Below are positions 2,782 to 51,543 of a DNA stretch of 64,000 bases, in pieces. The notes below the pieces were generated by a model. It saw only the letters and a program-made list of their open reading frames with translations, did no database searches and was not told the origin of the DNA. The DNA lies in the IMG/VR virus record IMGVR_UViG_3300032236_001850, positions 124,001 through 188,000 of that record. One strand, 5' to 3'. A program made the translations under genes and the position numbers. Every line of letters starts with the position of its first letter. Within the stretch, counting starts at the first letter, position 1.

Positions 2782-3342
2782 TTATGTAAATTTTGTTGCT
2801 CTTTTAGCTTTTATTAATTTTGTATACAAATCCCTGTTTGGAAGTTTATTTAGAATTTCTTGTAAATCCTCCGAATCCACAAATCTCATTATTCTGGGTG
2901 GGTTTTTTATTAGAGAATCAATAACACATTGATCAAAATCATCAGTTCCGTTATTTTTAAATATCTCATCAACATTACTAAAAACTTTTTTAAATTCCTC
3001 AATTATTTTGTACGGATTTCTTTCAATACACCAGAATGAGTACTTCTCATTATTTCTTGGTTTAAGTCCACTCCAGGCTTCATAGTCCATATTGTCGGCA
3101 TCTTGACTATTCATTAATTCACCAACCTCACTCATAAGCATATAAAGATCAGTCACTGTTGAAGCATCAGCTTCCTCAGCAAACTCTGAAATAACAACCG
3201 CAGCTGCATCAAAGAAATCCTTAGCAACCACGATCAAGTAACCAATCGTTGATACCTCCCTGCCAGTTATTTCCATATAGAAAACAAATCCCATCATATC
3301 AGATTTGTCATTTAGTTCCTCGTATAGTTTAATGTTTCTCAT
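2782..3342 (-). CDS. Hypothetical protein with CTS-like leader
   Basis: Starts MRNIKLYEELND; ATGA overlap with upstream gene. Confidence 0.8.
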   Translation of the reverse strand: MRNIKLYEELNDKSDMMGFVFYMEITGREVSTIGYLIVVAKDFFDAAAVVISEFAEEADASTVTDLYMLMSEVGELMNSQDADNMDYEAWSGLKPRNNEKYSFWCIERNPYKIIEEFKKVFSNVDEIFKNNGTDDFDQCVIDSLIKNPPRIMRFVDSEDLQEILNKLPNRDLYTKLIKAKRATKFT

Positions 3343-3965
3343 AAAAATCCTCTTTTTAATGCCCTTCCTATATGGGAAAAATCCTTTATTCCCGCTTTAT
3401 CCATGATTTTTTTCTTTAAATCCGGACACGGATTCAGAATATAAGTTGATGTTGGTTTGTCCTTAAAGAATTTAATAACCTTCGATTCTGGGATTCTTGT
3501 TATTAAAGATTTTATAAGATCTGGATTTCCACAGTCTATTAGCGGCTCCAAATTTTCGGGATCATCCAGGTATTTTCTATTTGACATATCATAGTCATAA
3601 AGTTCCTTAACTGCAAATTTTTCTATCCCTCTAAATATTGACTCGTAATCGGAAACACTAGACACACTAAATCCCATAATGTATTCCCAATCAAAATCTT
3701 TAAATTCGTAAATACCAATTCTTATCTTATCGTTGGATGTTGGTGTCATCTCTCTCAATTCATACTTCAACACAGTTTCATCCTCACCATGTGGATAAAT
3801 GGTTATCTTAGTTACCTTGCCGTCCTGTTTTTGTTCTGTGTTAATATCCGCCCATTCGGAAATTTTCTTATATGCATCAAGATTTCCCAATGAACCAACA
3901 TAAGGTCTATAAACATTCTCGTTGATTTTTCTTCCGAAAAGATTGAAAGATTTAATTATTCTCAT
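3339..3965 (-). CDS. Hypothetical protein, CTS-like leader plus TGIKD C-terminal module
   Basis: MRIIKSFNLF...; ends KAGIKDFSHIGRALKRGFL; GATATATA at 3970-3977 on minus strand. Confidence 0.85.
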   Translation of the reverse strand: MRIIKSFNLFGRKINENVYRPYVGSLGNLDAYKKISEWADINTEQKQDGKVTKITIYPHGEDETVLKYELREMTPTSNDKIRIGIYEFKDFDWEYIMGFSVSSVSDYESIFRGIEKFAVKELYDYDMSNRKYLDDPENLEPLIDCGNPDLIKSLITRIPESKVIKFFKDKPTSTYILNPCPDLKKKIMDKAGIKDFSHIGRALKRGFL

Positions 3966-3983
3966 CCCTTATATATCCCAAAT

Positions 3984-4069
3984 AAAAAAGGTTGGAGTAG
4001 CGAATTCCAACCTTTACATAGCCGTAACTATTCCGGTCCTAAAATCTGACTTCAGAGAGTCAGCCGGAT
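3984..4069 (-). ncRNA. Candidate structured small RNA (unidentified)
   Basis: AATATATA promoter variant at 4074-4081 (minus); stems UCCGG/CCGGA and CUGACU/AGUCAG, a UACG-loop hairpin, then terminator GGUUGGA/UCCAACC-U6; no ORF. Confidence 0.45.
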
Positions 4070-4137
4070 GTTCTATATATTCTTTGCATCCCAATTTTTA
4101 GGTCGAAATTTGATATATAAACCAAAAACATAATAAA

Positions 4138-4773
4138 ATGAGAAAAGCATGCATCGTGTTATTTCTTTTGGTTTTTGGAGTGATTAATGCTCAAGACACC
4201 ATAAGACTTAAACACACAAACTACACTGCTGTCTACAGCAAGACTTTAAATTACCCAGTACTTGTTGAATGGTGGGAAACCAAAGCAAAGGACGGATGTC
4301 CAAGCCCATTAAAAAGAAAAGATGAATTCAAACCAGATCCGCTTCTACTTAAGGAGACAGATATAGCGAAGGATTATGTTGGATCAGGGTATGACAGGGG
4401 ACATATGTGCCCAGCAGCTTCCAATCTATGTAGTGGTGATAAAGTTCAATCTGAATGCTTCTATTTCAGCAATATGGCACCGCAGCTTCACAGATTAAAT
4501 GCTGGAGATTGGAAAGTATTAGAGATGAAAACAAGAGAGATAGCGATTGCTAATGACAGTGTACATGTTTGGTGTGGTAGCTTGGGAGAGATTAAAAAAG
4601 TTGGTAAGATATCAATACCTAAAACCTGTTGGAAAGTGGTTTACATCAAGAAAACAAAAATCTTTACAGCATACATTTTCAATAATGATGATTCAAAACC
4701 AGACGGAATAGAAAACAATATAGTTCCTCTGGAAGCAGTAGAAAAATTAACAGGATATAAATTTAAAAGGTAA
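4138..4773 (+). CDS. DNA/RNA non-specific endonuclease (NucA/EndA type) with signal peptide
   Basis: YDRGHMCPA motif, FYFSNMAPQ, LNAGDWKVLE; hydrophobic N-terminus ending VINA-QD. Confidence 0.92.
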   Translation: MRKACIVLFLLVFGVINAQDTIRLKHTNYTAVYSKTLNYPVLVEWWETKAKDGCPSPLKRKDEFKPDPLLLKETDIAKDYVGSGYDRGHMCPAASNLCSGDKVQSECFYFSNMAPQLHRLNAGDWKVLEMKTREIAIANDSVHVWCGSLGEIKKVGKISIPKTCWKVVYIKKTKIFTAYIFNNDDSKPDGIENNIVPLEAVEKLTGYKFKR

Positions 4774-4806
4774 AAAAAAGGCTGATATCAATATCAGCCT
4801 TTTTTT
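4773..4806. terminator. Bidirectional intrinsic terminator
   Basis: A7-GGCTGATAT-caa-TATCAGCC-T run between convergent genes. Confidence 0.85.
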
Positions 4807-5569
4807 ATATCATTCCAGATTTTAGTTTTCTACCTATTTTTCCGTAATCTTTTAACCCTGTCCTTTCCAATACTCCAGCCTTAAATTTCTCAAGATTGTC
4901 GATCTTATAGAGTTCCAATGGATTTTTCTTGAAAAAATTATCAATATCCTCAAGAACATCATAATTTATAGGATCGCCGATTTTTAATTTAAGTATGTAC
5001 TCTAGATATTTTCTAATGAAATTGGAATATTCCGGAAGATGTAATTTTTTACTCTCCAAACCAGCATAAGTCATATAAAATCTACCCCCATATTCTCTAA
5101 AAGCTAATAAAATTTGGGATATAATAAGATGAAAAATATAGTTATTATCTCCGCTAACCTCTATTTGTCTCTCCCCAGCTTCATCAGTTCCTATATAATC
5201 AAATTTATTCTCGTCAGATTCGCCAATTACAAATCTTATTTTATAAACATTTGAACCTGATCCAAGACCAGGAGAGCAACTCATTATTTTTTCATTGGGT
5301 TCTGGGTTTAGAGCCTGGGTAAAAGCATAACTTATTGTTCCCCAAAGGAAATATGTATTTAATATAACATCAAGTGTCTTGAGCCCATTTGATTTATAAT
5401 CATAGATATCACCAGCATCATAATTAGGAAAAACATGTAGACCAACAGCTTGAGAGTGATTATTTTTATCCACTCTAAAAGTTATACATTTTTCCAAATA
5501 ATGGTATATTGGAATACGATCAATTGATTCTGATTCAAAAAGTTGATCAAAGGATTTTATTATTTTCAT
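4805..5569 (-). CDS. Hypothetical protein, CTS-like leader plus TGIKD module
   Basis: MKIIKSFDQLFES; ends RTGLKDYGKIGRKLKSGMI. Confidence 0.85.
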   Translation of the reverse strand: MKIIKSFDQLFESESIDRIPIYHYLEKCITFRVDKNNHSQAVGLHVFPNYDAGDIYDYKSNGLKTLDVILNTYFLWGTISYAFTQALNPEPNEKIMSCSPGLGSGSNVYKIRFVIGESDENKFDYIGTDEAGERQIEVSGDNNYIFHLIISQILLAFREYGGRFYMTYAGLESKKLHLPEYSNFIRKYLEYILKLKIGDPINYDVLEDIDNFFKKNPLELYKIDNLEKFKAGVLERTGLKDYGKIGRKLKSGMI

Positions 5570-6684
5570 TATATGAGCCCTCCTCTTAATTTTCTACCGA
5601 TAGCACTAAAATCTTTAATCCCAGTTCTTCTTAAAACACCAGCTTTATATTCTGGATAATCATCAAGTAAATAAAGATCCGTTGGATTTTTTTTCATATG
5701 GTCATCTAGGATTTTTTCAACTTCGGAACTCAAAGATGAACCAAGAAGATAACTTCTAGCAAAATCGGTGAGCAAATTGGATTTTTCATTCATATCTATA
5801 TAGTTTTCACCTATATAAATATTCAAATGTTCGATTTCCGTAGTGATTATCTTCTCTATTTCTTTAACCACCTCATCAATAGTTTTATAACCAAGATAAA
5901 TTTTAATATCTCTCATCTTTTTACTACGACCATGAAGATCAAGGTTTCGATCGACATTTTTGCTTGTTACCTTTTTACCTTCCCCTTTCGGTATAATTCG
6001 GATTTCATTTGCATTGGTACCAATCATGTATTGATTATTGTTTCTTTTTACAGCACCGCTTATTTCCAATATAAAATCAGGGAAAATACGTATGCCAGCT
6101 AAGGCCAAATAACGAAAATTTATCACAATCCCAGCATTTTTACCTTGCATATAAATACCACTAATCGAATTAATATGATCTATCAATTTGGATTTACCCT
6201 TGATTAAAGAGAAATCTGTTATGATGTCGCTTCTTCTTTCTTTTCTGTATACAACATATAAATCGATTGGGAGTTCCCATATCTTGGAAAAGATGAAAGC
6301 ATCATCGTCAACAAGCTCTTTTGCTTCCTTCCTATTGAAATCATTAGGTGCAAACTTATAAACAATATCTCTGATGAAAGTTTGAAGCAGATCCACAAGA
6401 TTCGAAGAGTATTTCATACCGTAATGGCTCCCACTTGAAACAAAGGTAAAGTGCCAATCGCTTCCAGATTTATAAAAGTATGGGCTGCCCGGATTGTTAA
6501 CATAGTCACTGGTGTTTTTGTTTATCAACACATTTATTCTACCGGTTCTTGTTGGGTAAAGTCTATACCATTTTTGAATTTGCTCGAGTTCTCTAGTTCC
6601 TTCGGCTAGTCTGAAGAACTCCTCACAGTCCTCATTCATTTTGGCTGCTTCAAAAAGTTCATTAAAAGTTTTAATTATTCTCAT
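5569..6684 (-). CDS. Hypothetical protein, CTS-like leader plus TGIKD module
   Basis: MRIIKTFNELFEA; ends RTGIKDFSAIGRKLRGGLI; GATATATA at 6689-6696 (minus). Confidence 0.85.
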   Translation of the reverse strand: MRIIKTFNELFEAAKMNEDCEEFFRLAEGTRELEQIQKWYRLYPTRTGRINVLINKNTSDYVNNPGSPYFYKSGSDWHFTFVSSGSHYGMKYSSNLVDLLQTFIRDIVYKFAPNDFNRKEAKELVDDDAFIFSKIWELPIDLYVVYRKERRSDIITDFSLIKGKSKLIDHINSISGIYMQGKNAGIVINFRYLALAGIRIFPDFILEISGAVKRNNNQYMIGTNANEIRIIPKGEGKKVTSKNVDRNLDLHGRSKKMRDIKIYLGYKTIDEVVKEIEKIITTEIEHLNIYIGENYIDMNEKSNLLTDFARSYLLGSSLSSEVEKILDDHMKKNPTDLYLLDDYPEYKAGVLRRTGIKDFSAIGRKLRGGLI

Positions 6685-43815: not shown

Positions 43816-44016
43816 ATGCCTGAACAATTTAAAGACTACATCAAAGGGAAATACCCAAACCTTGACACAGATAGAATCCTGTCTCTGATAGATCAGAACG
43901 TCAAACAGATACAACCAAATCTAAACAATCCAACCAGAGGATGTGTGGTGCCAATCGGCTGTGATCTGAACAAGAACCTCATCATTAAAATCATTTCAGA
44001 GTATCTAAATCCATAA
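43816..44016 (+). CDS. Hypothetical protein
   Basis: 66 aa. Confidence 0.7.
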   Translation: MPEQFKDYIKGKYPNLDTDRILSLIDQNVKQIQPNLNNPTRGCVVPIGCDLNKNLIIKIISEYLNP

Positions 44017-44018
44017 AC

Positions 44019-44225
44019 ATGAGACTAGTTAAGTGGAAGACGTTGATCCAGAATCAGCATGCCTTCGAATACGACGAATTCACTATGAAGGGCACAGTCA
44101 TGATAGAGGATGACTCGCTGTCAGACGAAGGGATCAGTAAGAGGATAGAGGAGAGGCTGCTCACTCAAGAACAGAGAGACAACAGGGTTTCAAAAATCTC
44201 CATCACCCACATTCCCATCATCTAA
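44019..44225 (+). CDS. Hypothetical protein
   Basis: 68 aa. Confidence 0.7.
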   Translation: MRLVKWKTLIQNQHAFEYDEFTMKGTVMIEDDSLSDEGISKRIEERLLTQEQRDNRVSKISITHIPII

Positions 44226-44268
44226 GAACCCGATTTTGCTAAGATATATAGAGAAAATAAGCAACAAA

Positions 44269-44568
44269 ATGGAAAATATTAAACCTTACGAGTCATTCAA
44301 TTTGGAACCAGAAGAAGTAAACGAAAACTTCTGGACTAAAATGTTTGGCAGACCCACAGTCGATGATGCTGCACATGACTCACTAAGAGGAAAAGGCTTC
44401 AGTCACAGAGGCAAGGACAGCGAGAGATCGGAAGACAACTACATCATGTTTGATGGTAACAAATTCTATCCAGATCAGATTGAGTATGATGATTATCATT
44501 CAACCAAGGAACTTCCAAGAGTAGAGAATGGCAAACTCATCATAGCCAACCCAGCCTGGAGTATGTAA
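44269..44568 (+). CDS. Hypothetical protein with CTS-like leader
   Basis: MENIKPYESFNLE; GATATATA at 44243. Confidence 0.8.
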   Translation: MENIKPYESFNLEPEEVNENFWTKMFGRPTVDDAAHDSLRGKGFSHRGKDSERSEDNYIMFDGNKFYPDQIEYDDYHSTKELPRVENGKLIIANPAWSM

Positions 44569-44581
44569 TCATATCACACAT

Positions 44582-44610
44582 AAAAAATCCACCTTCACGG
44601 TGGATTTTTT
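44582..44610. terminator. Bidirectional intrinsic terminator
   Basis: AAAAATCCACC-ttcac-GGTGGATTTTT. Confidence 0.88.
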
Positions 44611-44677
44611 ATGACATTATCTCTAGGAACTCGGCCAATCCGAGCATATTACTAGGTGATATACGGATGGATTAAAA

Positions 44678-46609
44678 TTAGATAAATCCTCTTTTTAATA
44701 ATTTACCAATCTTTCCGGCGTCCGTTATTCCAGTTCTTTTTATAACACCAGCTTTTACATCAGGATGCGAGTCTAGCATATAAATATCCAATGGCATCTT
44801 TTTAAAATAATCATCCAAAGCAGAGTCACCTATAATCGAATCAAGAAGCGTAAATGTTTCCGGATGTTCCTTAAAAAACTCTATAAATCTACCCACATCC
44901 CATCGACCCTCATTCTGCATAATATATTTTTTACCATTTATATCAAATGAAAAATACTCACCAATCTCATCAGGTAACCCCTTAAGTGATTTCAAATTGT
45001 TACCTGTACAAATAAAATATCCTCCGACCTCCCCCGGTGCTCCTTCTAAGGATTCAAGATTGTTATCATAACATTGGAAGCTTCTACCAACGATTTCAGG
45101 TGCTCCCTCCAGAGTCTTTAATTTGTTTTTTGCACACACAAATGAATTCTGGATTTCCCTAGGTGCTCCCTTCAATGACACAAGTTTGTTATCATTACAA
45201 AAGAAGCCAAAGGAAAATTGAGGTGCTCCCTCCAATGAGGTTAACTCGTTACTGGTACAACTGTATTCACCCTCAACTATCTCCGGACCTCCTTTTAATG
45301 ACTTCAGCTTGTTTTCTTGACACTCAAACCTACCGGCCACCGTTCTAGGTCCTCCCTCCAGTGATTCTAGTTTATTCTTATTGCAAGTGAAATTACCATT
45401 AACAATTTGAGGTGCACCTTCAAGGGTTTTCAAATTGTTGTCTGAACAATCGAAACCATCCACCGTTTGTGGTGAACCTATTAACGATTCTAGATTACTA
45501 TTATTACAAGCTAAACTTTTCACTTTCTCTGGTGCTCCCATCAGGTTTTTTAAATTGTTGTATGAACAATTGAAACCACCATCCACCGTTTGTGGTGCTC
45601 CTTTTAGTGATGTTATATTATTTCTAGAACAGTTGAAATCTCCAGTAACGTGACCAAATTCAATGCCTTGGAAATTTCTTATTCCCCAGTCATTACATCT
45701 AAAAGTTCCTTTTATGTCCACAAGTCCAGTCTCCTCATTTATTTTCCATTCCCCACTAGTGCACTCGTTCAACCATTTAACTTTATTCGATTCCCTTCCA
45801 GTTCCACTAAGATCTTTAATTCCGGTTCTTTTTAGCACACCACTCTTTAAATCGGGAAGGTCGTCTAGTAGATATAAGTCCTCAGGATTCTCAGTGAAAT
45901 GATTGTCAAGTATATTCTCAATTTTTTTACCGTTTACTATTCCAAGATCGGAAAGACATGTCATCACATCCATATCATCTAATTTAATAGCGATACGAAC
46001 AAGGTCAGCAGCAAGATCAGATTTTATCTTAGAATTAAGAACAACCCCAGCTTTAATACCAGGAATTGACAGCAGAAATTCAAGTTGTTTGAATTGTCTA
46101 TAAATTTTGTAAATACCAGAATTTCCAGTAGGAAATCCTCTACTGTCACTGTTTGATGATGTTCTTAATTCTTCCTTAGATAGCTTATCTAGGATTCTTT
46201 TGATCGAAAGATTTAGTCCATAGAATTGTCCATTAAAAACAGCTTCCTTCAATGTAGAATATGAGATCTTTGAAACATATGTCATTTGTGCAATACTATA
46301 CAATATCAACTTTGTCATTGCATCGTTCATCTCCTCTTGTGTGGAGAAAGGCATATCTTTCTCAATTGTAAAACTTCCATAAATCAGGTTGACCTTTCCA
46401 TCACCGGAAGGCTTTAATGAACATGAGTAGGAGGTTCCAAAATTATATTCTCTCACCCCCAGGGAACTACTCTTGGCACCATCTCCCAAAAATTTCCTAG
46501 CCTTCTTATAAATAGGAAGTTTACTCAATGTTTCAAAAGACGGAAACTCCTCCTTGTCCTTTTTGGTTGCGCCTTCAAACAACTCATTAAATGTTTTTAT
46601 TCTTCTCAT
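44678..46609 (-). CDS. Chimeric LRR protein: CTS leader, domain, TGIKD module, 22-aa LRRs, second TGIKD module
   Basis: About 11 repeats of CxxNxLxSLxGAPxxVxGxF; module at ILDNHF...RTGIKD and at the C-terminus. Confidence 0.88.
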   Translation of the reverse strand: MRRIKTFNELFEGATKKDKEEFPSFETLSKLPIYKKARKFLGDGAKSSSLGVREYNFGTSYSCSLKPSGDGKVNLIYGSFTIEKDMPFSTQEEMNDAMTKLILYSIAQMTYVSKISYSTLKEAVFNGQFYGLNLSIKRILDKLSKEELRTSSNSDSRGFPTGNSGIYKIYRQFKQLEFLLSIPGIKAGVVLNSKIKSDLAADLVRIAIKLDDMDVMTCLSDLGIVNGKKIENILDNHFTENPEDLYLLDDLPDLKSGVLKRTGIKDLSGTGRESNKVKWLNECTSGEWKINEETGLVDIKGTFRCNDWGIRNFQGIEFGHVTGDFNCSRNNITSLKGAPQTVDGGFNCSYNNLKNLMGAPEKVKSLACNNSNLESLIGSPQTVDGFDCSDNNLKTLEGAPQIVNGNFTCNKNKLESLEGGPRTVAGRFECQENKLKSLKGGPEIVEGEYSCTSNELTSLEGAPQFSFGFFCNDNKLVSLKGAPREIQNSFVCAKNKLKTLEGAPEIVGRSFQCYDNNLESLEGAPGEVGGYFICTGNNLKSLKGLPDEIGEYFSFDINGKKYIMQNEGRWDVGRFIEFFKEHPETFTLLDSIIGDSALDDYFKKMPLDIYMLDSHPDVKAGVIKRTGITDAGKIGKLLKRGFI

Positions 46610-46744
46610 CCGTTATATATCCAAATTAAATGAAACTACATATACCCATGTGGCAATCACAGACTGAAATACATAGATAAAATAGAATCAAAAGAACCTC
46701 ATTCGAAGTGAACCTGTCTAAAATCCGATACCGATATATACAAA

Positions 46745-47152
46745 ATGAAACACATCAACACATTCTACCAACACATTAACGAATCAAAATCTCAAATAGC
46801 GGAAGCCATAGAGGTTAACGCAGATGAATTTGAATCAGCCGGTTCAAAAGAAGGAAATTTCATGGTTAATTTTCCAAAGGAAGATGTTGAAATTTTGAAG
46901 GATTTGAGTGAATTGATTGGATTTGAATGCGTTTCACAAGTTGGCATATTTCTAATGGTTACTAGAGATCCAAGCACTAGAGAAAAACCATTGGCATATT
47001 TTTCTAAAACCGCTAAATTATACAGAATGGAAATATACCCGAAGGAGCTTACCTGAGATAAATTATACTACTTGGGTGATTCACCAGAATCATTGATGGC
47101 TGTTTTCCTCAGCTATGTTGGATGGAGACCAGAGTGGATTAAAATAAGATAA
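46745..47152 (+). pseudogene. CTS-leader/WIKIR gene interrupted by in-frame TGA (47054-47056)
   Basis: Frame continues after TGA as DKLYYLGDSPESL...PEWIKIR-TAA. Confidence 0.75.
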
Positions 47153-47156
47153 TCAA

Positions 47157-47584
47157 ATGAAACACATACATACATTCTACCAACACATCAACGAATCTCA
47201 ACTCGAAATAGAATCGACCAATCTACCGGATGGGGTAAAAGAGATTGATGAAGAGGAACTTAAAAAATGGGGAAAAAAGCCACACAAATTCTTACCATCG
47301 GGGATGATGAAGCATTTAAACAGTTTAAAAATTGGACTGGAGTGACCAAATCTGAGGATCCCCGGGATTTGCTAGTCCTTAAATCATCATCCACCTCAGA
47401 GGAATATCAATGGTGCTTTGTTCTTTGGACCAAGGAAGAAGATGAGGAGAAAGCAAGACGATTTCTTTCAAGAACACTAGAGGGTGTTTTTGTAACATAC
47501 ATTATCACCTCACCGTCACAAAAAGTTAGAGAGCAGCTAATGCACTACATCAACGATTATGTTAAATGGATCAAAATCAGATAG
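47157..47584 (+). pseudogene. CTS-leader/WIKIR gene split by -1 frameshift at A-AAA-AAG (47273-47279)
   Basis: Leader in frame of 47157; WIKIR in the -1 frame (47267..47584). Confidence 0.75.
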
Positions 47585-47605
47585 ACAAATAAAACATAGA
47601 CAATA

Positions 47606-48046
47606 ATGAAAAACTTAATGATTTTTACTGATTTTTTAAAAGAATCAATTAATTCAGGTGGAATGCCACATCGAAGATATGAAGAAATAACTAAAGATCA
47701 ATGGCGAGAGAAAAAAGAAACACTCCAATGTGTTAGCTTGACAAATGATGAGATAGAGTCAATAGATGAAATATATGAATTTATAAGGGATGTTATATAC
47801 CCAAAAGCAGAAAGAATAAAGTTTTGGGAGTTTTCTCAGAAAGACACTCAATATCTCATCGAAATACGTGATTTAAACATTATGATTACTAAATATTCAC
47901 CATCAATGTGGTTAATTTTTACTAATAGGAATGAGGATGTAGAAGATGAACATTTTTATATTGCAACTTCATTAAAGGAAACAATCGATCTTACAGCATA
48001 TCTTGCGGGTGAATTATTTCATATCGAATGGATCAAAATAAGATAG
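47606..48046 (+). CDS. CTS-leader/WIKIR protein
   Basis: MKNLMIFTDFLKES...IEWIKIR. Confidence 0.85.
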   Translation: MKNLMIFTDFLKESINSGGMPHRRYEEITKDQWREKKETLQCVSLTNDEIESIDEIYEFIRDVIYPKAERIKFWEFSQKDTQYLIEIRDLNIMITKYSPSMWLIFTNRNEDVEDEHFYIATSLKETIDLTAYLAGELFHIEWIKIR

Positions 48047-48050
48047 AAGA

Positions 48051-48683
48051 ATGAAACACATCCATACATTCTCACAACACATCAACGAGAGCTCCTCTCA
48101 GGAGATCATGGACTTCTGCAAGAAGTACAAGATTTCAATTGAACAGTTTAGAGGACAGGAGGAAATCCCAGGTGATTTTAGAAAACTTTCAAATCTAAAA
48201 TCCATTCCTTCAGGTTTCAACCCAAAGGTTGAAGGGAATCTGACTCTTTCCTCGATTTACAGCTTACCTGATGGGTTTTCACCCGTTGTTGGTGGAGATC
48301 TGGAACTGCATGAACTGAATCATTTGCCAGAGGGATTCTCACCCACTGTGGGAAGAGATCTACATCTGAACTATCTAAATCGTATTCCATATGAATTCAC
48401 TGTTAATGTGGGAGACAATCTGATTTTAGATAATGTGTATGAGGTTGGGAAGGGATTCTCACCCACTGTGGGCGGCAATCTGGATCTAGGATCACTCAGA
48501 ATTTATGCGGAAGGATTCTCACCCATCGTGGGCGGGAATCTAATCTTAAATAAAATGGAAAGCATTCCGCTAAAAGGTGTTTCGCTAAAAGGAGTTAAAG
48601 GAAAGATAGAACTTTTTCACAATTACAATCGTGTAAATCTAGAAACCATAGCGGGTGATATAAAATGGATCAAAATAAGATAG
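48051..48683 (+). CDS. CTS-leader/WIKIR protein with 22-aa LRR-like repeats
   Basis: Repeats LxxLPEGFSPxVGGDLxL; DNA repeat ggattctcaccca about every 66 bp. Confidence 0.85.
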   Translation: MKHIHTFSQHINESSSQEIMDFCKKYKISIEQFRGQEEIPGDFRKLSNLKSIPSGFNPKVEGNLTLSSIYSLPDGFSPVVGGDLELHELNHLPEGFSPTVGRDLHLNYLNRIPYEFTVNVGDNLILDNVYEVGKGFSPTVGGNLDLGSLRIYAEGFSPIVGGNLILNKMESIPLKGVSLKGVKGKIELFHNYNRVNLETIAGDIKWIKIR

Positions 48684-48695
48684 GGTATATAGCAC

Positions 48696-49517
48696 ATGAA
48701 AAGAATACTAACATTCCACCAGCTATTTGAAGCAGCCAAACCAAAGGACACATCTTGGATGCCAACCCCCGCGGAGATAAGTCAATTGGAAATTTTTCAA
48801 AATCTGAGAGATGATCATCTTATACGTTTATCCGAACCATACCTCTTAACACAGGGTCAGATAGAAAGGAATGTGAGATCAATAAGTTTTTCAACAGACA
48901 CCAATAACCTTTATAGACTGGAGCCAAATTCAGATGGCACAATCAACATCAAATTTGGAAGAAGCTACATAGCCAAAAATAAGCCTTTCAAAAACCAGGA
49001 GGAAATGACGGATGTTATTATTTACTTAATGATCGTAACAATAGCAATTTATGATCCTGTATGGAGTCGTAAGCCACACAATCCACCCAAAAGAACTCCT
49101 TTCAATGACGATCACGTGAAACTAAATGGGGAATTGGAGAGAGGTGATCTCGAAGGCTTGCTAAACGGCATCACAGAGCTTATGAAATCCAAATTTGGAT
49201 TCTGTGAGGAAAGACTGGTCCAGATTGCGATCATTCTGATGTGGTACATGAAGTCAGCCACACAGGAGGCAAAAAACAACTTCATAAAGCAACTGATCGT
49301 CAATGTGACAGCAGAGAGAATGTTCTTGCATTGGTGCCATCTGCCTAAAATTTTATCTCATCGCCAACCCTTCGTGTCGATGCCTGCAGTTACGGAAGGT
49401 CTCTCCATGGCATTCTCAGATTTTCTTAATAACAATGGGGATGCTCCAATGCCACCAGCTCTGGGGGAGTTCCTTTCCAAGATAACCGATGGGTTCAGAT
49501 GGATTAAAATCAGATAA
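48696..49517 (+). CDS. CTS-leader/WIKIR protein
   Basis: MKRILTFHQLFEA...FRWIKIR; N-terminal part resembles that of 44678..46609. Confidence 0.85.
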   Translation: MKRILTFHQLFEAAKPKDTSWMPTPAEISQLEIFQNLRDDHLIRLSEPYLLTQGQIERNVRSISFSTDTNNLYRLEPNSDGTINIKFGRSYIAKNKPFKNQEEMTDVIIYLMIVTIAIYDPVWSRKPHNPPKRTPFNDDHVKLNGELERGDLEGLLNGITELMKSKFGFCEERLVQIAIILMWYMKSATQEAKNNFIKQLIVNVTAERMFLHWCHLPKILSHRQPFVSMPAVTEGLSMAFSDFLNNNGDAPMPPALGEFLSKITDGFRWIKIR

Positions 49518-49576
49518 CCAGATAAATAAATCATCACTGATTAAAGTGGGATATATAAATAAAATAAAACCAAAAA

Positions 49577-50062
49577 ATGAAACACCTAATCGCCTTTGAG
49601 ATTTTTGAAAATGAGAATATGGAATCTCTAATTCCTAAAATTGCTATTTTTAGCGAGGGTGACTACTATAAACTAAAGGAATATATAAAATCCAATAACA
49701 TAAAGACTGATCTCATTCCCCACCATTTCCCATACGAGGAATATTACAGAGATAATATTAAACGTGGTCAGAGGGGCAATAATTTTTTCTATATCATCAA
49801 CGATAAGGTTATGTTGTACCCAAGTCCAGGATACGATAAAAAATTGAAAAAACTAACAGATAGGGATCTAAATTTTCCTAAATCCCACAGAGCTGCATAC
49901 ATTAAAGATTTCAGAAACATCCCACTAGAGGAACTTTACAACAACTCGGAAGAAATACTTGGGTACTCAATATTCCTACTGGACAAACTTATAACAAAGG
50001 CGAAGCAAATGACAAGAAGCAAATTAACACCATTTGAGGTGACTCTATTCGATAGAGATTAG
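49577..50062 (+). CDS. Hypothetical protein with CTS-like leader
   Basis: MKHLIAFEIFEN; GATATATA at 49550. Confidence 0.82.
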   Translation: MKHLIAFEIFENENMESLIPKIAIFSEGDYYKLKEYIKSNNIKTDLIPHHFPYEEYYRDNIKRGQRGNNFFYIINDKVMLYPSPGYDKKLKKLTDRDLNFPKSHRAAYIKDFRNIPLEELYNNSEEILGYSIFLLDKLITKAKQMTRSKLTPFEVTLFDRD

Positions 50063-50065
50063 CAC

Positions 50066-50521
50066 ATGAAACACATACACACATTTCACCAACACGTCAA
50101 CGAATCCCAATCTCTACCTTCAGGGGTAAGCAAGGTGACAGCCGATGAGTATACAAAACAAAAATGTGTTCCTCTATCCCAGGAGGAAACTGAAAACATC
50201 TTATTCTTAACTAATATAGTGGAACTTGCTTCTTCGACAGATCCACAGAGGAAAAACGCGGATAGCGAGGACAATCAGATCTATCTTTGCGCTGGTTTTT
50301 ATCCTTATGGAGCTATTCCGCCATGGGCATTCTTCGGAAAGTCAAAGTCAGGAATTTACTATCTATCAGCTAATCCCACACGATTAACGGACACAGAAGG
50401 CCAGGAAAGCAACTATTACGCTGCAAACTCATTGCAACCTCTAATTTCAATTGCTCTTGATATGTTCATTAAACTTGGAATGGTTGATACCTCCGGAATC
50501 AGCTGGATCGAAATCAAGTAA
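50066..50521 (+). CDS. CTS-leader protein ending WIEIK
   Basis: MKHIHTFHQHVNES...ISWIEIK. Confidence 0.85.
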   Translation: MKHIHTFHQHVNESQSLPSGVSKVTADEYTKQKCVPLSQEETENILFLTNIVELASSTDPQRKNADSEDNQIYLCAGFYPYGAIPPWAFFGKSKSGIYYLSANPTRLTDTEGQESNYYAANSLQPLISIALDMFIKLGMVDTSGISWIEIK

Positions 50522-50665
50522 ACCTCTAAGGGGCCGGCCACCGGAGATCTAACATCCAACATCATTATAGCACGTTTAAGGGACAATAATCTACAAACCC
50601 ATATCTACATCTTATTAGAGAGATATAAACAAGCTACACTCAAATAAACAACCGCATATAAGCAT

Positions 50666-51028
50666 ATGAAACACATCCTACATATAGACACGTATCAACA
50701 CATGAACGAGTCAATAACAAACCCATCATGGGAGAGAGAAGGCACAAGAGTCACACTGGCAGATATAGAGCCACACCTAGAAGAGGAGTTGCTAATCCAA
50801 CCGGACTCCATAGCACATCTACTCATACCCACAGAGAGGGATCCTAGAAGAGTGGCACAAGCCAATCTGGATCACCCAATCATACTCACAAGAGACAAGG
50901 GCCAGCTCACAAGCATACTAGATGGACAACACAGAGTCACAAAAGCCATAGAGCAAGGCAAGTGGGTAAAGGCAAGACAACTCGATCTAGACACAGTCCC
51001 AGAACACATAGCCAAGGTGCTCAGATAA
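50666..51028 (+). CDS. ParB/Srx N-terminal-like protein with CTS-like leader
   Basis: RVAQANLDHPIIL...ILDGQHRVTKA. Confidence 0.75.
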   Translation: MKHILHIDTYQHMNESITNPSWEREGTRVTLADIEPHLEEELLIQPDSIAHLLIPTERDPRRVAQANLDHPIILTRDKGQLTSILDGQHRVTKAIEQGKWVKARQLDLDTVPEHIAKVLR

Positions 51029-51543
51029 CCCAACTCTCATAGAGGCATTCTAAAGGGACTTAGGAAGCAAACCATATAGAGAGATAGTCAGAATAATATA
51101 ACACAGACACGGCCAGGTAATCGCGTTTAACGACCCCCTTCGGAAGCCCCTCTGCATGTGTGAGTTACCACCCAGGGCTGTCCCAACAAGATTTCCTCGT
51201 CGCCCCGATTTCCCATTTCATTCCACTTCTCTCCACTTTGTTCCACTGGGCAAGAGTTTCCACACAGAAACCCACGTTTTCTTTAGGAAAAACCAAATCT
51301 TTTATATATCCGTGATTTTGGGACGAGGTTCCCTGAACACCCATCACTATCTCGCCCCGAACCATGCCTCTTCCCTACATCTCTCTATGTGGAATGGATC
51401 TCCTGCCTCTCTATTAGAGACGGAACATTCTATGTGGCATTATCTCTCTATGCTCTCTCTATAGGAATGACTACCGGGTTGGCCGGCCCTCACCCCTATC
51501 TTGGCCCCAAATTCCCCCATTGCCGGCAGAGGATATATAGTGT
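51029..51543. other. GC-richer non-coding locus with skew flip and CTCTCTAT repeats (candidate origin/terminus)
   Basis: CTCTCTAT at 51381, 51407, 51444, 51455, inverted copy at 51076; TGGCCGGCCC at 51480 inverted to 50530. Confidence 0.45.

What the first reader, a model, noticed from the sequence alone, without database searches (positions are those of the whole stretch)
47157..47584. Canonical A-AAA-AAG -1 slippery site joins the leader ORF to the WIKIR ORF
Seen: zero-frame codons TGG GGA AAA AAG (47268-47279) contain both G-GGA-AAA and A-AAA-AAG; a -1 shift yields ...WGKKATQILT...VKWIKIR (about 142 aa, paralog-sized), while no shift gives 62 aa. Known: A-AAA-AAG is the dnaX/IS-type bacterial frameshift heptamer. 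No strong stimulatory hairpin seen. Together with the neighbour's TGA, this suggests recoding may toggle the tag; a homopolymer indel is the alternative.
Basis: partly seen in the sequence, partly recalled or inferred. Interest (0 to 1): 0.7.

Follow-up and report, generated by a model that had tools for sequence, protein, structure and literature searches.

The report
Strain-specific frameshift mutation in phage gene
The two open reading frames are one small gene of a 434-kb T4-like phage, split in this one strain by a recent one-base loss in an A-run; close relatives carry the gene intact, so this is an ordinary frameshift mutation and not programmed recoding.

Summary
TGG GGA AAA AAG lies at 47268-47279, the zero frame ends after 62 aa, and a -1 shift gives a 142-aa protein with the family's leader (MKHIHTFYQHINES) and tail (WIKIR).

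The recoding interpretation is not supported:
- Relatives about 97-98% identical in DNA carry one uninterrupted 141-aa gene with G4-A7-T at this spot. That allele is on 12 contigs and in four pond runs. More distant orthologs (70% identity) are also intact, with A7.
- The window has G4-A6-G, one base shorter. This allele occurs only in the window's strain, where three assemblies agree, so it is not an assembly error.
- The same strain has GGA>TGA in the neighbouring paralog and a 2.07-kb insertion just upstream.
- No stimulatory structure follows the site. The genome uses the standard code and does not use Shine-Dalgarno sites. The phage encodes tRNA-Lys(CUU) and no suppressor tRNA.
- In-phase A_AAA_AAG occurs about 50 times in ordinary genes.

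Best reading: a recent inactivating deletion in a fast-turnover cassette array, with at most incidental sub-percent frameshifting.

One point stays unexplained. The only two strain-specific changes in the gene are adjacent, and together they create the heptamer.

Inferred context: the array may encode capsid-targeted internal proteins of a T4-like phage.

The parts
47157..47345 (+). Zero-frame 'leader ORF' of gene B (62 aa). Residues 1-41 are the true N-terminal part, comprising the 14-aa family leader and the start of the folded core. Residues 42-62 are an out-of-frame tail.
   Evidence: The same 62-aa product is called on 3 other contigs of the same strain.
47268..47279 (+). The frame-break site, TGG GGA AAA AAG (G4 A6 G). 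It is one base shorter than the G4-A7-T of the closest relatives and the G3-C-A7-T of more distant orthologs. G at 47279 replaces their T.
   Evidence: Alignments A1 and A2. Logan contigs of runs X2, X4, X5 and X9 show 'A put in behind 47272' and G>T at 47279. Run X1 is identical to the window at depth 38.7.
47279..47584 (+). The -1-frame continuation of gene B (residues 42-142 of the ancestral protein). It holds most of the folded core and the C-terminal WIKIR tail.
   Evidence: The AlphaFold2 model of the intact ortholog has a folded core at residues 21-135, with the leader (1-20) and tail (136-141) at low confidence.
47267..47584 (+). A 105-aa ORF from an ATG that the deletion brought into frame. 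This is what the JGI gene caller annotated. Its upstream context is A-rich, so a leaderless truncated product is conceivable.
   Evidence: The genome's start contexts are A-rich and depleted of Shine-Dalgarno motifs.
46745..47152 (+). Neighbouring paralog A, cut by an in-frame TGA at 47054-47056. Relatives have GGA or GGG (Gly) there and an intact 135-aa gene.
   Evidence: T>G at 47054 is seen in runs X6, X7, X2, X4 and X5.
44664..46732 (-). A strain-specific insertion of about 2.07 kb. It carries a 643-aa LRR-repeat gene (44678-46609, minus strand) and a '..YGWIKIR*' remnant at its left edge. It sits 11 nt upstream of A's ATG and is absent from all relatives examined.
   Evidence: BLAST of the window against L010, sequence at the junctions, and loose ends of contigs from other runs that read straight across the empty site.
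47606..51028 (+). The rest of the tandem cassette array: C 47606-48046, D 48051-48683, E 48696-49517, F 49577-50062, G 50066-50521 and H 50666-51028. Most members share the leader MKH[IL]xTFxQH[IV]NES and the tail W[IV]KI[RK]. The content of the array differs between strains.

Best explanation
Gene B (47157-47584) is a single ancestral gene of 141-142 aa. In this strain it has been split by a very recent net loss of one base in its Lys-Lys A-run: ancestral A7-T is now A6-G. It belongs to a tandem, fast-turnover array of small proteins in a 434.5-kb T4-like phage.

Normal translation gives a 62-aa product that has the leader but lacks about 95 residues of the fold and the WIKIR tail. The gene is therefore functionally knocked out or strongly knocked down. 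Any full-length protein would come only from incidental, sub-percent to low-percent slippage on G_GGA_AAA_AAG. A leaderless 105-aa fragment might arise from the fortuitous ATG at 47267.

The adjacent paralog A carries an equally recent nonsense mutation (GGA>TGA). Both lesions occur only in the strain that also has a 2.07-kb insertion just upstream.

Shown: the lesion, its absence from relatives, its restriction to one strain, and the absence of stimulators. Inferred: loss of function, and the proposed role of the family as capsid-targeted internal (ejected) proteins whose leader ends in a T4-protease-type L/I-x-E site.
For: - Intact orthologs exist. P0002 and P0003 are 142 aa at 70% identity and have A7 at the site. 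The closest relatives (L010, L011, L012; 97.3% nt identity by BLAST, 98% mean column identity) have a 141-aa gene reading TGG GGA AAA AAA TCC.
- The intact allele is widespread. It is on 12 contigs from many samples and in four pond-metagenome runs from two studies.
- The broken allele is found only in the window's strain: the JGI contig, the 434,721-bp ENA contig (identical over 8.3 kb) and the Logan contig of run X1 at depth 38.7.
- Polarising with the outgroups L002 and L003, the strain-specific changes in B are only the deletion and the adjacent T>G. The other five differences are on the relatives' branch, so the lesion is very recent.
- The neighbour's TGA is a one-step change from the Gly codon kept in relatives.
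- No downstream structure was found and no Rfam family matched.
- Genes lack Shine-Dalgarno sites (8.7% against a 15% background).
- The code is standard. There are 31 tRNAs, including Lys-CUU, and no suppressor tRNA.
- In-phase A_AAA_AAG occurs 48-50 times in ordinary genes.
- Without stimulators, slippery heptamers in E. coli give only 2-10 times a 0.055% background (PMC4066793).
- Other members of the family are broken too. L024/L025 is split by a 1-nt loss at the homologous spot, while its 140-aa relative P0046 is intact. L026 has an in-frame TAA.
- The break lies inside the predicted folded core, at residue 41 of a core spanning 21-135.
Against: - The two strain-specific changes in B are adjacent, and together they produce exactly the most efficient bacterial heptamer, in the correct phase. 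If they were independent, that adjacency would have about a 0.5% chance.
- No further decay is seen downstream of either lesion. That fits both a very recent lesion and continued use of the gene.
- A second family member is split at the homologous position and also needs a -1 shift.
- Logan contigs cannot show minority A7 reads, so a mixed population is not excluded.
- There are no expression or proteomic data.
Confidence: 0.85

Rival explanations
1. Compensatory or newly programmed -1 ribosomal frameshifting. After, or together with, the one-base loss, the T>G change made G_GGA_AAA_AAG. A useful fraction of ribosomes would then restore the full-length leader-to-WIKIR protein, while the rest make a short leader peptide. 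Combined with leaky read-through of the neighbour's TGA, the strain would turn two cassette proteins down and not fully off.
For: - Two overlapping slippery heptamers are in the canonical phase.
- The only two strain-specific changes in B are adjacent and create the AAG.
- The downstream frame is fully open, with the WIKIR tail intact.
- The allele is the consensus at about 39x word depth.
- Low-level compensatory frameshifting on indels in homopolymer runs is a known phenomenon (PMC5009743).
- A second family member is split at the homologous place.
Against: - The arrangement is not conserved. All other lineages, at about 97-98% and 70% identity, have an uninterrupted gene.
- No downstream hairpin or pseudoknot stands out from shuffled sequence.
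- The genome does not use Shine-Dalgarno pairing, and the only GAGG lies 16 nt upstream.
- The phage supplies tRNA-Lys(CUU). From my own knowledge of Tsuchihashi and Brown 1992 (listed as reference 41 of PMC4066793), such a tRNA lowers slippage on AAG.
- Heptamers without stimulators give well under 1% in E. coli.
- The same heptamer sits in phase in about 50 ordinary genes.
- The other split member shows decay: its tail is WVKIG and it has a 9-nt deletion.
- A simple reversion from A6 to A7 would restore the gene fully.
Confidence: 0.09
2. A split gene with two independently made products: the 62-aa leader peptide and a leaderless 105-aa protein started at the ATG at 47267. The C-terminal domain would stay in the cell and not be targeted by its leader.
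For: - The ATG at 47267 is in frame with the downstream ORF and has an A-rich upstream context, like real starts in this genome.
- The JGI gene caller annotated this ORF.
Against: - The ATG is in frame only because of the deletion. It is out of frame in all intact relatives.
- The 105-aa product would lack the first strand and helix of the predicted core.
- No diverged relative shows the same split arrangement.
- Internal starts inside a translated ORF are usually inefficient (my own knowledge).
Confidence: 0.04
3. Sequencing or assembly error in the homopolymer: the real DNA is A7 and the gene is intact.
For: - Homopolymer runs are the classic place for length errors.
- The sequencing platform of the source run is not on record.
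- The three assemblies may derive from the same or related samples.
Against: - Three assemblies made by different pipelines agree exactly: the JGI contig, the 434,721-bp ENA contig and the Logan contig at word depth 38.7.
- The difference from relatives is not a pure length change. It includes a T>G substitution.
- The same strain carries a base substitution (TGA) and a 2-kb insertion beside it, so the haplotype is genuinely distinct.
Confidence: 0.02

Closest known systems
Programmed -1 ribosomal frameshifting at A_AAA_AAG (E. coli dnaX, IS3/IS911-family transposases)
   Same: The heptamer is identical and in the canonical phase, and a second overlapping heptamer (G_GGA_AAA) precedes it. A -1 shift joins an upstream ORF to a longer downstream ORF.
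   Different: - No Shine-Dalgarno-like element lies 10-14 nt upstream, and no downstream hairpin or pseudoknot is present.
- The arrangement is not conserved. Orthologs are single uninterrupted genes.
- The shifted product is simply the ancestral protein, not an added alternative product.
- A tRNA-Lys(CUU) is encoded by the phage.
Indels in homopolymer runs with low-level 'compensatory' frameshifting (e.g. the G-run of herpes simplex thymidine kinase; Atkins et al. 2016, PMC5009743)
   Same: There is a one-base length change in a homopolymer run of a viral gene. The remaining run is itself slippery, so a trickle of full-length product is expected.
   Different: Nothing here shows that the trickle is selected or useful. 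The gene is an accessory cassette that other strains lack or exchange.
T4 internal proteins IPI, IPII and IPIII with their N-terminal capsid targeting sequence (CTS), cleaved by the gp21 prohead protease
   Same: - The phage has a T4-type major capsid protein and a gp21-type protease.
- Many otherwise unrelated small proteins share a short N-terminal leader with Phe at position 7, ending in [ILVM]-x-E (INE, LFE, IFE, LKE). That matches the L/I-x-E cleavage rule and the 10-residue CTS described for T4 (PMC9026906).
- The loci are hypervariable between strains, as reported for T-even internal-protein genes (PMC3012670).
   Different: - The leader is 13-14 residues, against 10 in T4.
- Members also carry a conserved C-terminal tail (WIKIR, or RKLKxGL[IM] in a second class), which has no T4 counterpart that I know of.
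- There is no sequence homology to T4 internal proteins, and no Pfam or PHROG family matches.
- Packaging, cleavage and ejection are untested.

Membership tests
Programmed -1 ribosomal frameshift site (dnaX / IS3 type) | An X_XXY_YYZ slippery heptamer in phase with the upstream frame | tested here: met
   G_GGA_AAA and A_AAA_AAG lie at 47270-47279 in the zero frame of the ORF that starts at 47157. The same heptamer is in phase in 48-50 ordinary genes of this genome.
Programmed -1 ribosomal frameshift site (dnaX / IS3 type) | The two-frame arrangement and the heptamer are conserved in homologs | tested here: not met
   All orthologs found, at about 97-98% nt identity and at 70% aa identity, are single uninterrupted genes with A7. 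The broken allele occurs only in the window's strain.
Programmed -1 ribosomal frameshift site (dnaX / IS3 type) | A stimulatory element: a downstream hairpin or pseudoknot and/or an upstream Shine-Dalgarno-like sequence at 10-14 nt | tested here: not met
   Folds of 47280-47340, 47280-47380 and 47240-47345 give z-scores of -1.2, -1.0 and -0.3 against shuffles. No Rfam family matched. GAGG lies 16 nt upstream, and the genome is depleted of Shine-Dalgarno motifs at gene starts.
Programmed -1 ribosomal frameshift site (dnaX / IS3 type) | Measured frameshifting that yields both products | not testable with these tools
   No RNA or proteome data exist for this uncultured phage. All runs that hold it are DNA.
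Recent inactivating mutation (frameshift pseudogene or null allele) | Intact orthologs in close relatives, with the lesion confined to one lineage | tested here: met
   Searches show intact orthologs. Searches show the broken allele only in the window's strain.
Recent inactivating mutation (frameshift pseudogene or null allele) | The lesion lies at a mutational hot spot (a homopolymer run) and is real in the DNA | tested here: met
   A7 in relatives against A6 here. Three assemblies agree, and the Logan contig has depth 38.7. A7 runs are under-represented in this genome's genes, 85 observed against 181 expected.
Recent inactivating mutation (frameshift pseudogene or null allele) | Further decay or relaxed constraint downstream of the lesion | tested here: inconclusive
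   Downstream differences from L010 are mostly non-synonymous. Outgroups place them on the L010 branch, so the window's lineage has no change beyond the lesion. The lesion is too recent for this test to be informative.
T4-type capsid-targeted internal (ejected) head proteins | The phage encodes a T4 gp21-type prohead protease and a gp23-type capsid protein | tested here: met
   PF03420 scores 36.3 bits (cut-off 27) at genome 296907-297239. PF07068 scores 139.5 bits at genome 299066-300448.
T4-type capsid-targeted internal (ejected) head proteins | A short conserved N-terminal leader, shared by otherwise unrelated proteins, that ends in L/I-x-E | tested here: met
   The leader MKH[IL]xTFxQH[IV]NE-S occurs on the array members, and MKxIKTFxxLFE-type leaders occur on about 26 ORFs genome-wide. 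The leader is disordered in the model. The rule is taken from PMC9026906.
T4-type capsid-targeted internal (ejected) head proteins | Cleavage of the leader, presence in virions, and ejection into the host | not testable with these tools
   This needs virion proteomics or N-terminal sequencing of an uncultured phage.
T4-type capsid-targeted internal (ejected) head proteins | Sequence or fold homology to known internal proteins | tested here: not met
   No Pfam or PHROG family matched. No fold match was found in PDB, AFDB clusters or the ESM Atlas; every TM-score normalised to the model's length was 0.40 or lower.

The most novel reading that the evidence does not exclude
The T>G next to the one-base loss was selected because it turns the damaged A-run into G_GGA_AAA_AAG. 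On this reading the strain keeps a low, tuned supply of full-length protein by stimulator-free -1 frameshifting. Beside the leaky TGA in the adjacent paralog, this would be a freshly born 'pseudo-pseudogene' pair in an array of putative ejected phage proteins.
Probability: 0.08. Interest if true: 0.5.

Novelty: already known. Interest (0 to 1): 0.15.

Why it matters
As a frameshift site it matters little. It is a strain-level null or knock-down allele of an accessory phage gene, and it should be annotated as a disrupted gene, not as two genes and not as a recoding event.

It is a useful caution for scans. A-runs are both indel hot spots and slippery sites, so a canonical heptamer at a frame break is expected from mutation alone.

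The surrounding locus is of more interest. It is a strain-variable array of small proteins with a T4-CTS-like leader and a conserved WIKIR tail, in a 434-kb T4-like freshwater phage. This array is a plausible set of capsid-delivered proteins under rapid turnover.

Tried and rejected
Searches that found nothing:
- blastn of the array against 50,697 phage records gave no match.
- A peptide-pattern scan of IMG/VR for B relatives gave nothing.
- An exact-pattern scan for alleles of the junction, with a variable gap, found nothing in metagenome contigs or viral contigs. The hoped-for intermediate allele A7-GCC was therefore not found.
- Pfam and PHROGs on B orthologs and paralogs gave no family.
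- Foldseek against PDB and AFDB clusters, and the ESM Atlas, gave no credible match.
- Rfam over 44000-51500 gave nothing.

Ideas rejected:
- An alternative genetic code. Reading TGA or TAG as sense does not lengthen the large ORFs.
- A suppressor tRNA for the neighbour's TGA. None of the 31 tRNAs is one.
- Gene conversion from a paralog as the source of AAAAAAGCC. The 11-mers GGAAAAAAGCC and AAAAAAGCCAC are unique in the genome.

Inconclusive or failed:
- A promoter-like GATATATA/TATATAGCA motif upstream of the first genes of arrays was inconclusive. The idea that the upstream insertion silenced A and B remains speculation.
- Three shorter family hits were checked as possible recurrent splits. 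One is cut by a contig end (P0044), one is a real split (P0040) and one has an in-frame TAA (P0036).

Full report
**Setting.** The window is bases 124001-188000 of a 434,509-bp virus record with direct terminal repeats. GC content is 35%. The genome has a T4-type major capsid gene (PF07068, 139.5 bits) next to a gp21-type prohead protease domain (PF03420, 36.3 bits). It also has 31 tRNA genes. Reading TGA, TAG or TAA as sense does not lengthen the large ORFs, so the standard code applies. Gene starts are A-rich and depleted of Shine-Dalgarno motifs, 8.7% against a 15% background.

**The observation.** Searches confirm it. An ORF starts at 47157 with MKHIHTFYQHINES, reads TGG GGA AAA AAG at 47268-47279, and stops at 47345 after 62 aa. 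The -1 frame is open from 47264 to 47584 and ends in WIKIR. A -1 shift on G_GGA_AAA or on A_AAA_AAG gives the same 142-aa product. Both heptamers are in the canonical phase.

The gene is one of a tandem array: A 46745, B 47157, C 47606, D 48051, E 48696, F 49577, G 50066 and H 50666. Most members share the 14-residue leader and a W[IV]KI[RK] C-terminus. In this genome that tail occurs essentially only in this cluster; two weak pattern matches, WVRLR and WVKLR, lie elsewhere in the window. The fused B aligns with paralogs A, C and G over its whole length, including across the junction. The two ORFs are therefore halves of one gene.

**Is the motif special?** No. AAAAAAG occurs 370 times in the genome, and 48-50 of these are in the canonical phase inside ordinary genes. 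That is somewhat fewer than codon frequencies predict (68). In-phase A7 runs are rarer still, 85 against 181 expected. Long A-runs therefore seem to be costly in this genome.

**Relatives.**
- A search of 5.8 billion proteins with the 105-aa ORF found two orthologs of 142 aa at 70% identity. Both are uninterrupted. Their DNA reads TGG GCA AAA AAA TCC.
- A search with the neighbour A found a 135-aa intact ortholog at 94% identity. Its contigs (L010, L011, L012) are about 97-98% identical in DNA to the window across A and B: 97.3% by BLAST over A-C and 98% mean column identity.
- In these close relatives B is a single 141-aa gene reading TGG GGA AAA AAA TCC, and A has GGA where the window has TGA.
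- The intact B allele is on 12 contigs from many samples.
- Logan contigs of four pond-metagenome runs from two studies all show an extra A behind 47272, G>T at 47279 and T>G at 47054.
- The window's G4-A6-G is thus one base shorter than every relative.

**Is the lesion real?** Yes. The 434,721-bp ENA contig (L009) is identical to the window over 8.3 kb and has both lesions. The Logan contig of run X1 (37 kb, word depth 38.7) is identical over 46700-47700. The 62-aa product is called on three other contigs, and A's truncated 103-aa product is on about five contigs in all. These assemblies may come from the same or related samples. They exclude an assembler artefact but are not independent populations. 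The difference from relatives also includes a substitution (T>G), which a homopolymer length error would not produce.

**Age and direction of the changes.** I used the 70%-identity orthologs as an outgroup. The five other differences between the window and L010 in B lie on the L010 branch: E/G, K/R, R/G, D/Y and a 3-nt indel. The window's lineage has only the one-base loss and the adjacent T>G. For A, the contigs of runs X6 and X7 carry GGA or GGG, and X7 shares the window's states at the three downstream sites. So both lesions are very recent, and the open downstream frames carry no information about selection. The crude pN/pS values must be read with that in mind.

**Features that would mark programmed frameshifting are missing.**
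- No downstream structure stands out from shuffled sequence, with z between -0.3 and -1.2. No Rfam family matches.
- The nearest GAGG is 16 nt upstream, and this genome does not use Shine-Dalgarno pairing.
- The phage encodes tRNA-Lys(CUU) as well as tRNA-Lys(UUU). The high shiftiness of AAG in E. coli is attributed to the lack of such a tRNA. This point is from my own knowledge of Tsuchihashi and Brown 1992, which is listed as reference 41 in PMC4066793.
- Without stimulators, heptamers in E. coli reach only 2-10 times a 0.055% background (PMC4066793).
- No suppressor tRNA exists for the neighbour's TGA. GGA can reach a stop codon in one step only by becoming TGA, so the supposedly leaky stop is not a choice.

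**Family turnover.** A profile search of 1.84 billion representative proteins found only 42 clusters. Most are single-frame proteins of 120-160 aa. Several are broken:
- the window's A and B;
- L024/L025, which has lost one C directly after an A6 run at the homologous position, also needs -1, and has a decayed tail (WVKIG) and a 9-nt deletion, while its 140-aa relative P0046 is intact;
- L026, which has an in-frame TAA.

Array content also differs between strains. Cassettes D and F are absent from L010, which has other cassettes in their place. The window's strain alone has a 2,069-bp insertion (44664-46732), carrying a 643-aa LRR gene on the minus strand, 11 nt upstream of A's ATG. Contigs from six other runs read straight across the empty site.

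**What the protein may be (inference).**
- No Pfam, PHROG or fold match was found.
- The AlphaFold2 model of the intact ortholog has mean pLDDT 71.8 and pTM 0.67. It shows a folded alpha/beta core at residues 21-135. The leader (1-20) and the WIKIR tail (136-141) are at low confidence. The break at residue 41 lies inside the core.
- The leader ends in I-N-E. Variants end in LFE, IFE or LKE, with Phe at position 7. About 26 ORFs genome-wide carry such a leader.
- In T4, a 10-residue N-terminal capsid targeting sequence directs diverse internal proteins into the prohead, and gp21 removes it after L/I-x-E. Related phages carry varied proteins with CTS-like leaders (PMC9026906; PMC3012670).
- Because this phage has the T4-type protease and capsid, I consider a CTS-like propeptide the most likely role of the leader.
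- The WIKIR tail varies at synonymous sites (ATT/ATC/ATA), and the 4-nt spacers that follow it vary in sequence. It is therefore conserved as protein. Its role is unknown.

**Verdict.** The frame break is a recent, strain-specific one-base loss in a Lys-Lys A-run of an accessory cassette gene. It sits beside an equally recent nonsense mutation in the neighbouring paralog. It is an ordinary null or knock-down allele. Incidental slippage on the A-run may give a trace of full-length protein, but nothing indicates programmed recoding.

The one loose end is that the deletion and the only substitution in this lineage are adjacent and together create the heptamer. That leaves about 8-9% for a selected compensatory frameshift.

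Noticed in passing
window 46745-51028 (+); L010, L002, L003: A tandem cassette array of small proteins that share a 13-14-aa leader MKH[IL]xTFxQH[IV]NES and a C-terminal W[IV]KI[RK]. The gap between each stop and the next ATG is often exactly 4 nt. Cassette content differs between strains that are about 90-97% identical. The family has only 42 clusters among 1.84 billion representative proteins.
   Followed up: partly
window 46745-47152, TGA at 47054-47056: Paralog A is cut by an in-frame TGA, and the WIKIR tail follows in the same frame. Relatives have GGA or GGG (Gly) and an intact 135-aa gene. This is a single G>T change confined to this strain.
   Followed up: yes
window 44664-46732: A strain-specific 2.07-kb insertion lies 11 nt upstream of A's ATG. 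It carries a 643-aa LRR-repeat protein on the minus strand (leader MRRIKTFNELFE, tail KLLKRGFI). A remnant '..YGWIKIR*' of a WIKIR cassette sits at its left edge (44656-44685). Whether the insertion affects transcription of A and B is unknown.
   Followed up: partly
genome 127339-130684, 168678-170609, 197313-199237 (window 3339-6684 and 44678-46609; the third locus lies outside the window): A second class of leader-bearing proteins ends in RKLKxGL[IM] or KLLKRGFI and not in WIKIR. Protein E (window 48696-49517) shares its N-terminal domain with the LRR protein but carries the WIKIR tail, so heads, bodies and tails appear to be shuffled.
   Followed up: no
L024:1421-1797, L025:122-498 against L027:1479-1865: In other samples, a distant family member is split by a 1-nt loss directly after an A6 run, at the position homologous to the window's break. 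It also needs a -1 shift. It has a decayed tail (WVKIG) and a 9-nt deletion, while a relative at 74% identity is intact.
   Followed up: yes
genome 210278-228985 (outside the window): A cluster of 31 tRNA genes includes both Lys-UUU and Lys-CUU and has no suppressor. Gene starts across the genome lack Shine-Dalgarno motifs and are A-rich at positions -14 to -10 and at -3. This resembles phages of Bacteroidota-type hosts (my own knowledge; the host is not identified).
   Followed up: partly
window 44583-44612: A perfect GC-rich hairpin flanked by an A-run and a T-run (aaaaaatccacc...ggtggatttttt) looks like a bidirectional intrinsic terminator just upstream of the array. It is conserved in L010.
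   Followed up: no
genome 296907-300448 (outside the window): The gp21-type protease domain lies in a 655-aa open frame directly upstream of the gp23-type capsid gene. A leader-bearing ORF (MKCIPSFEDFEE...) follows the capsid gene at 300621.
   Followed up: no
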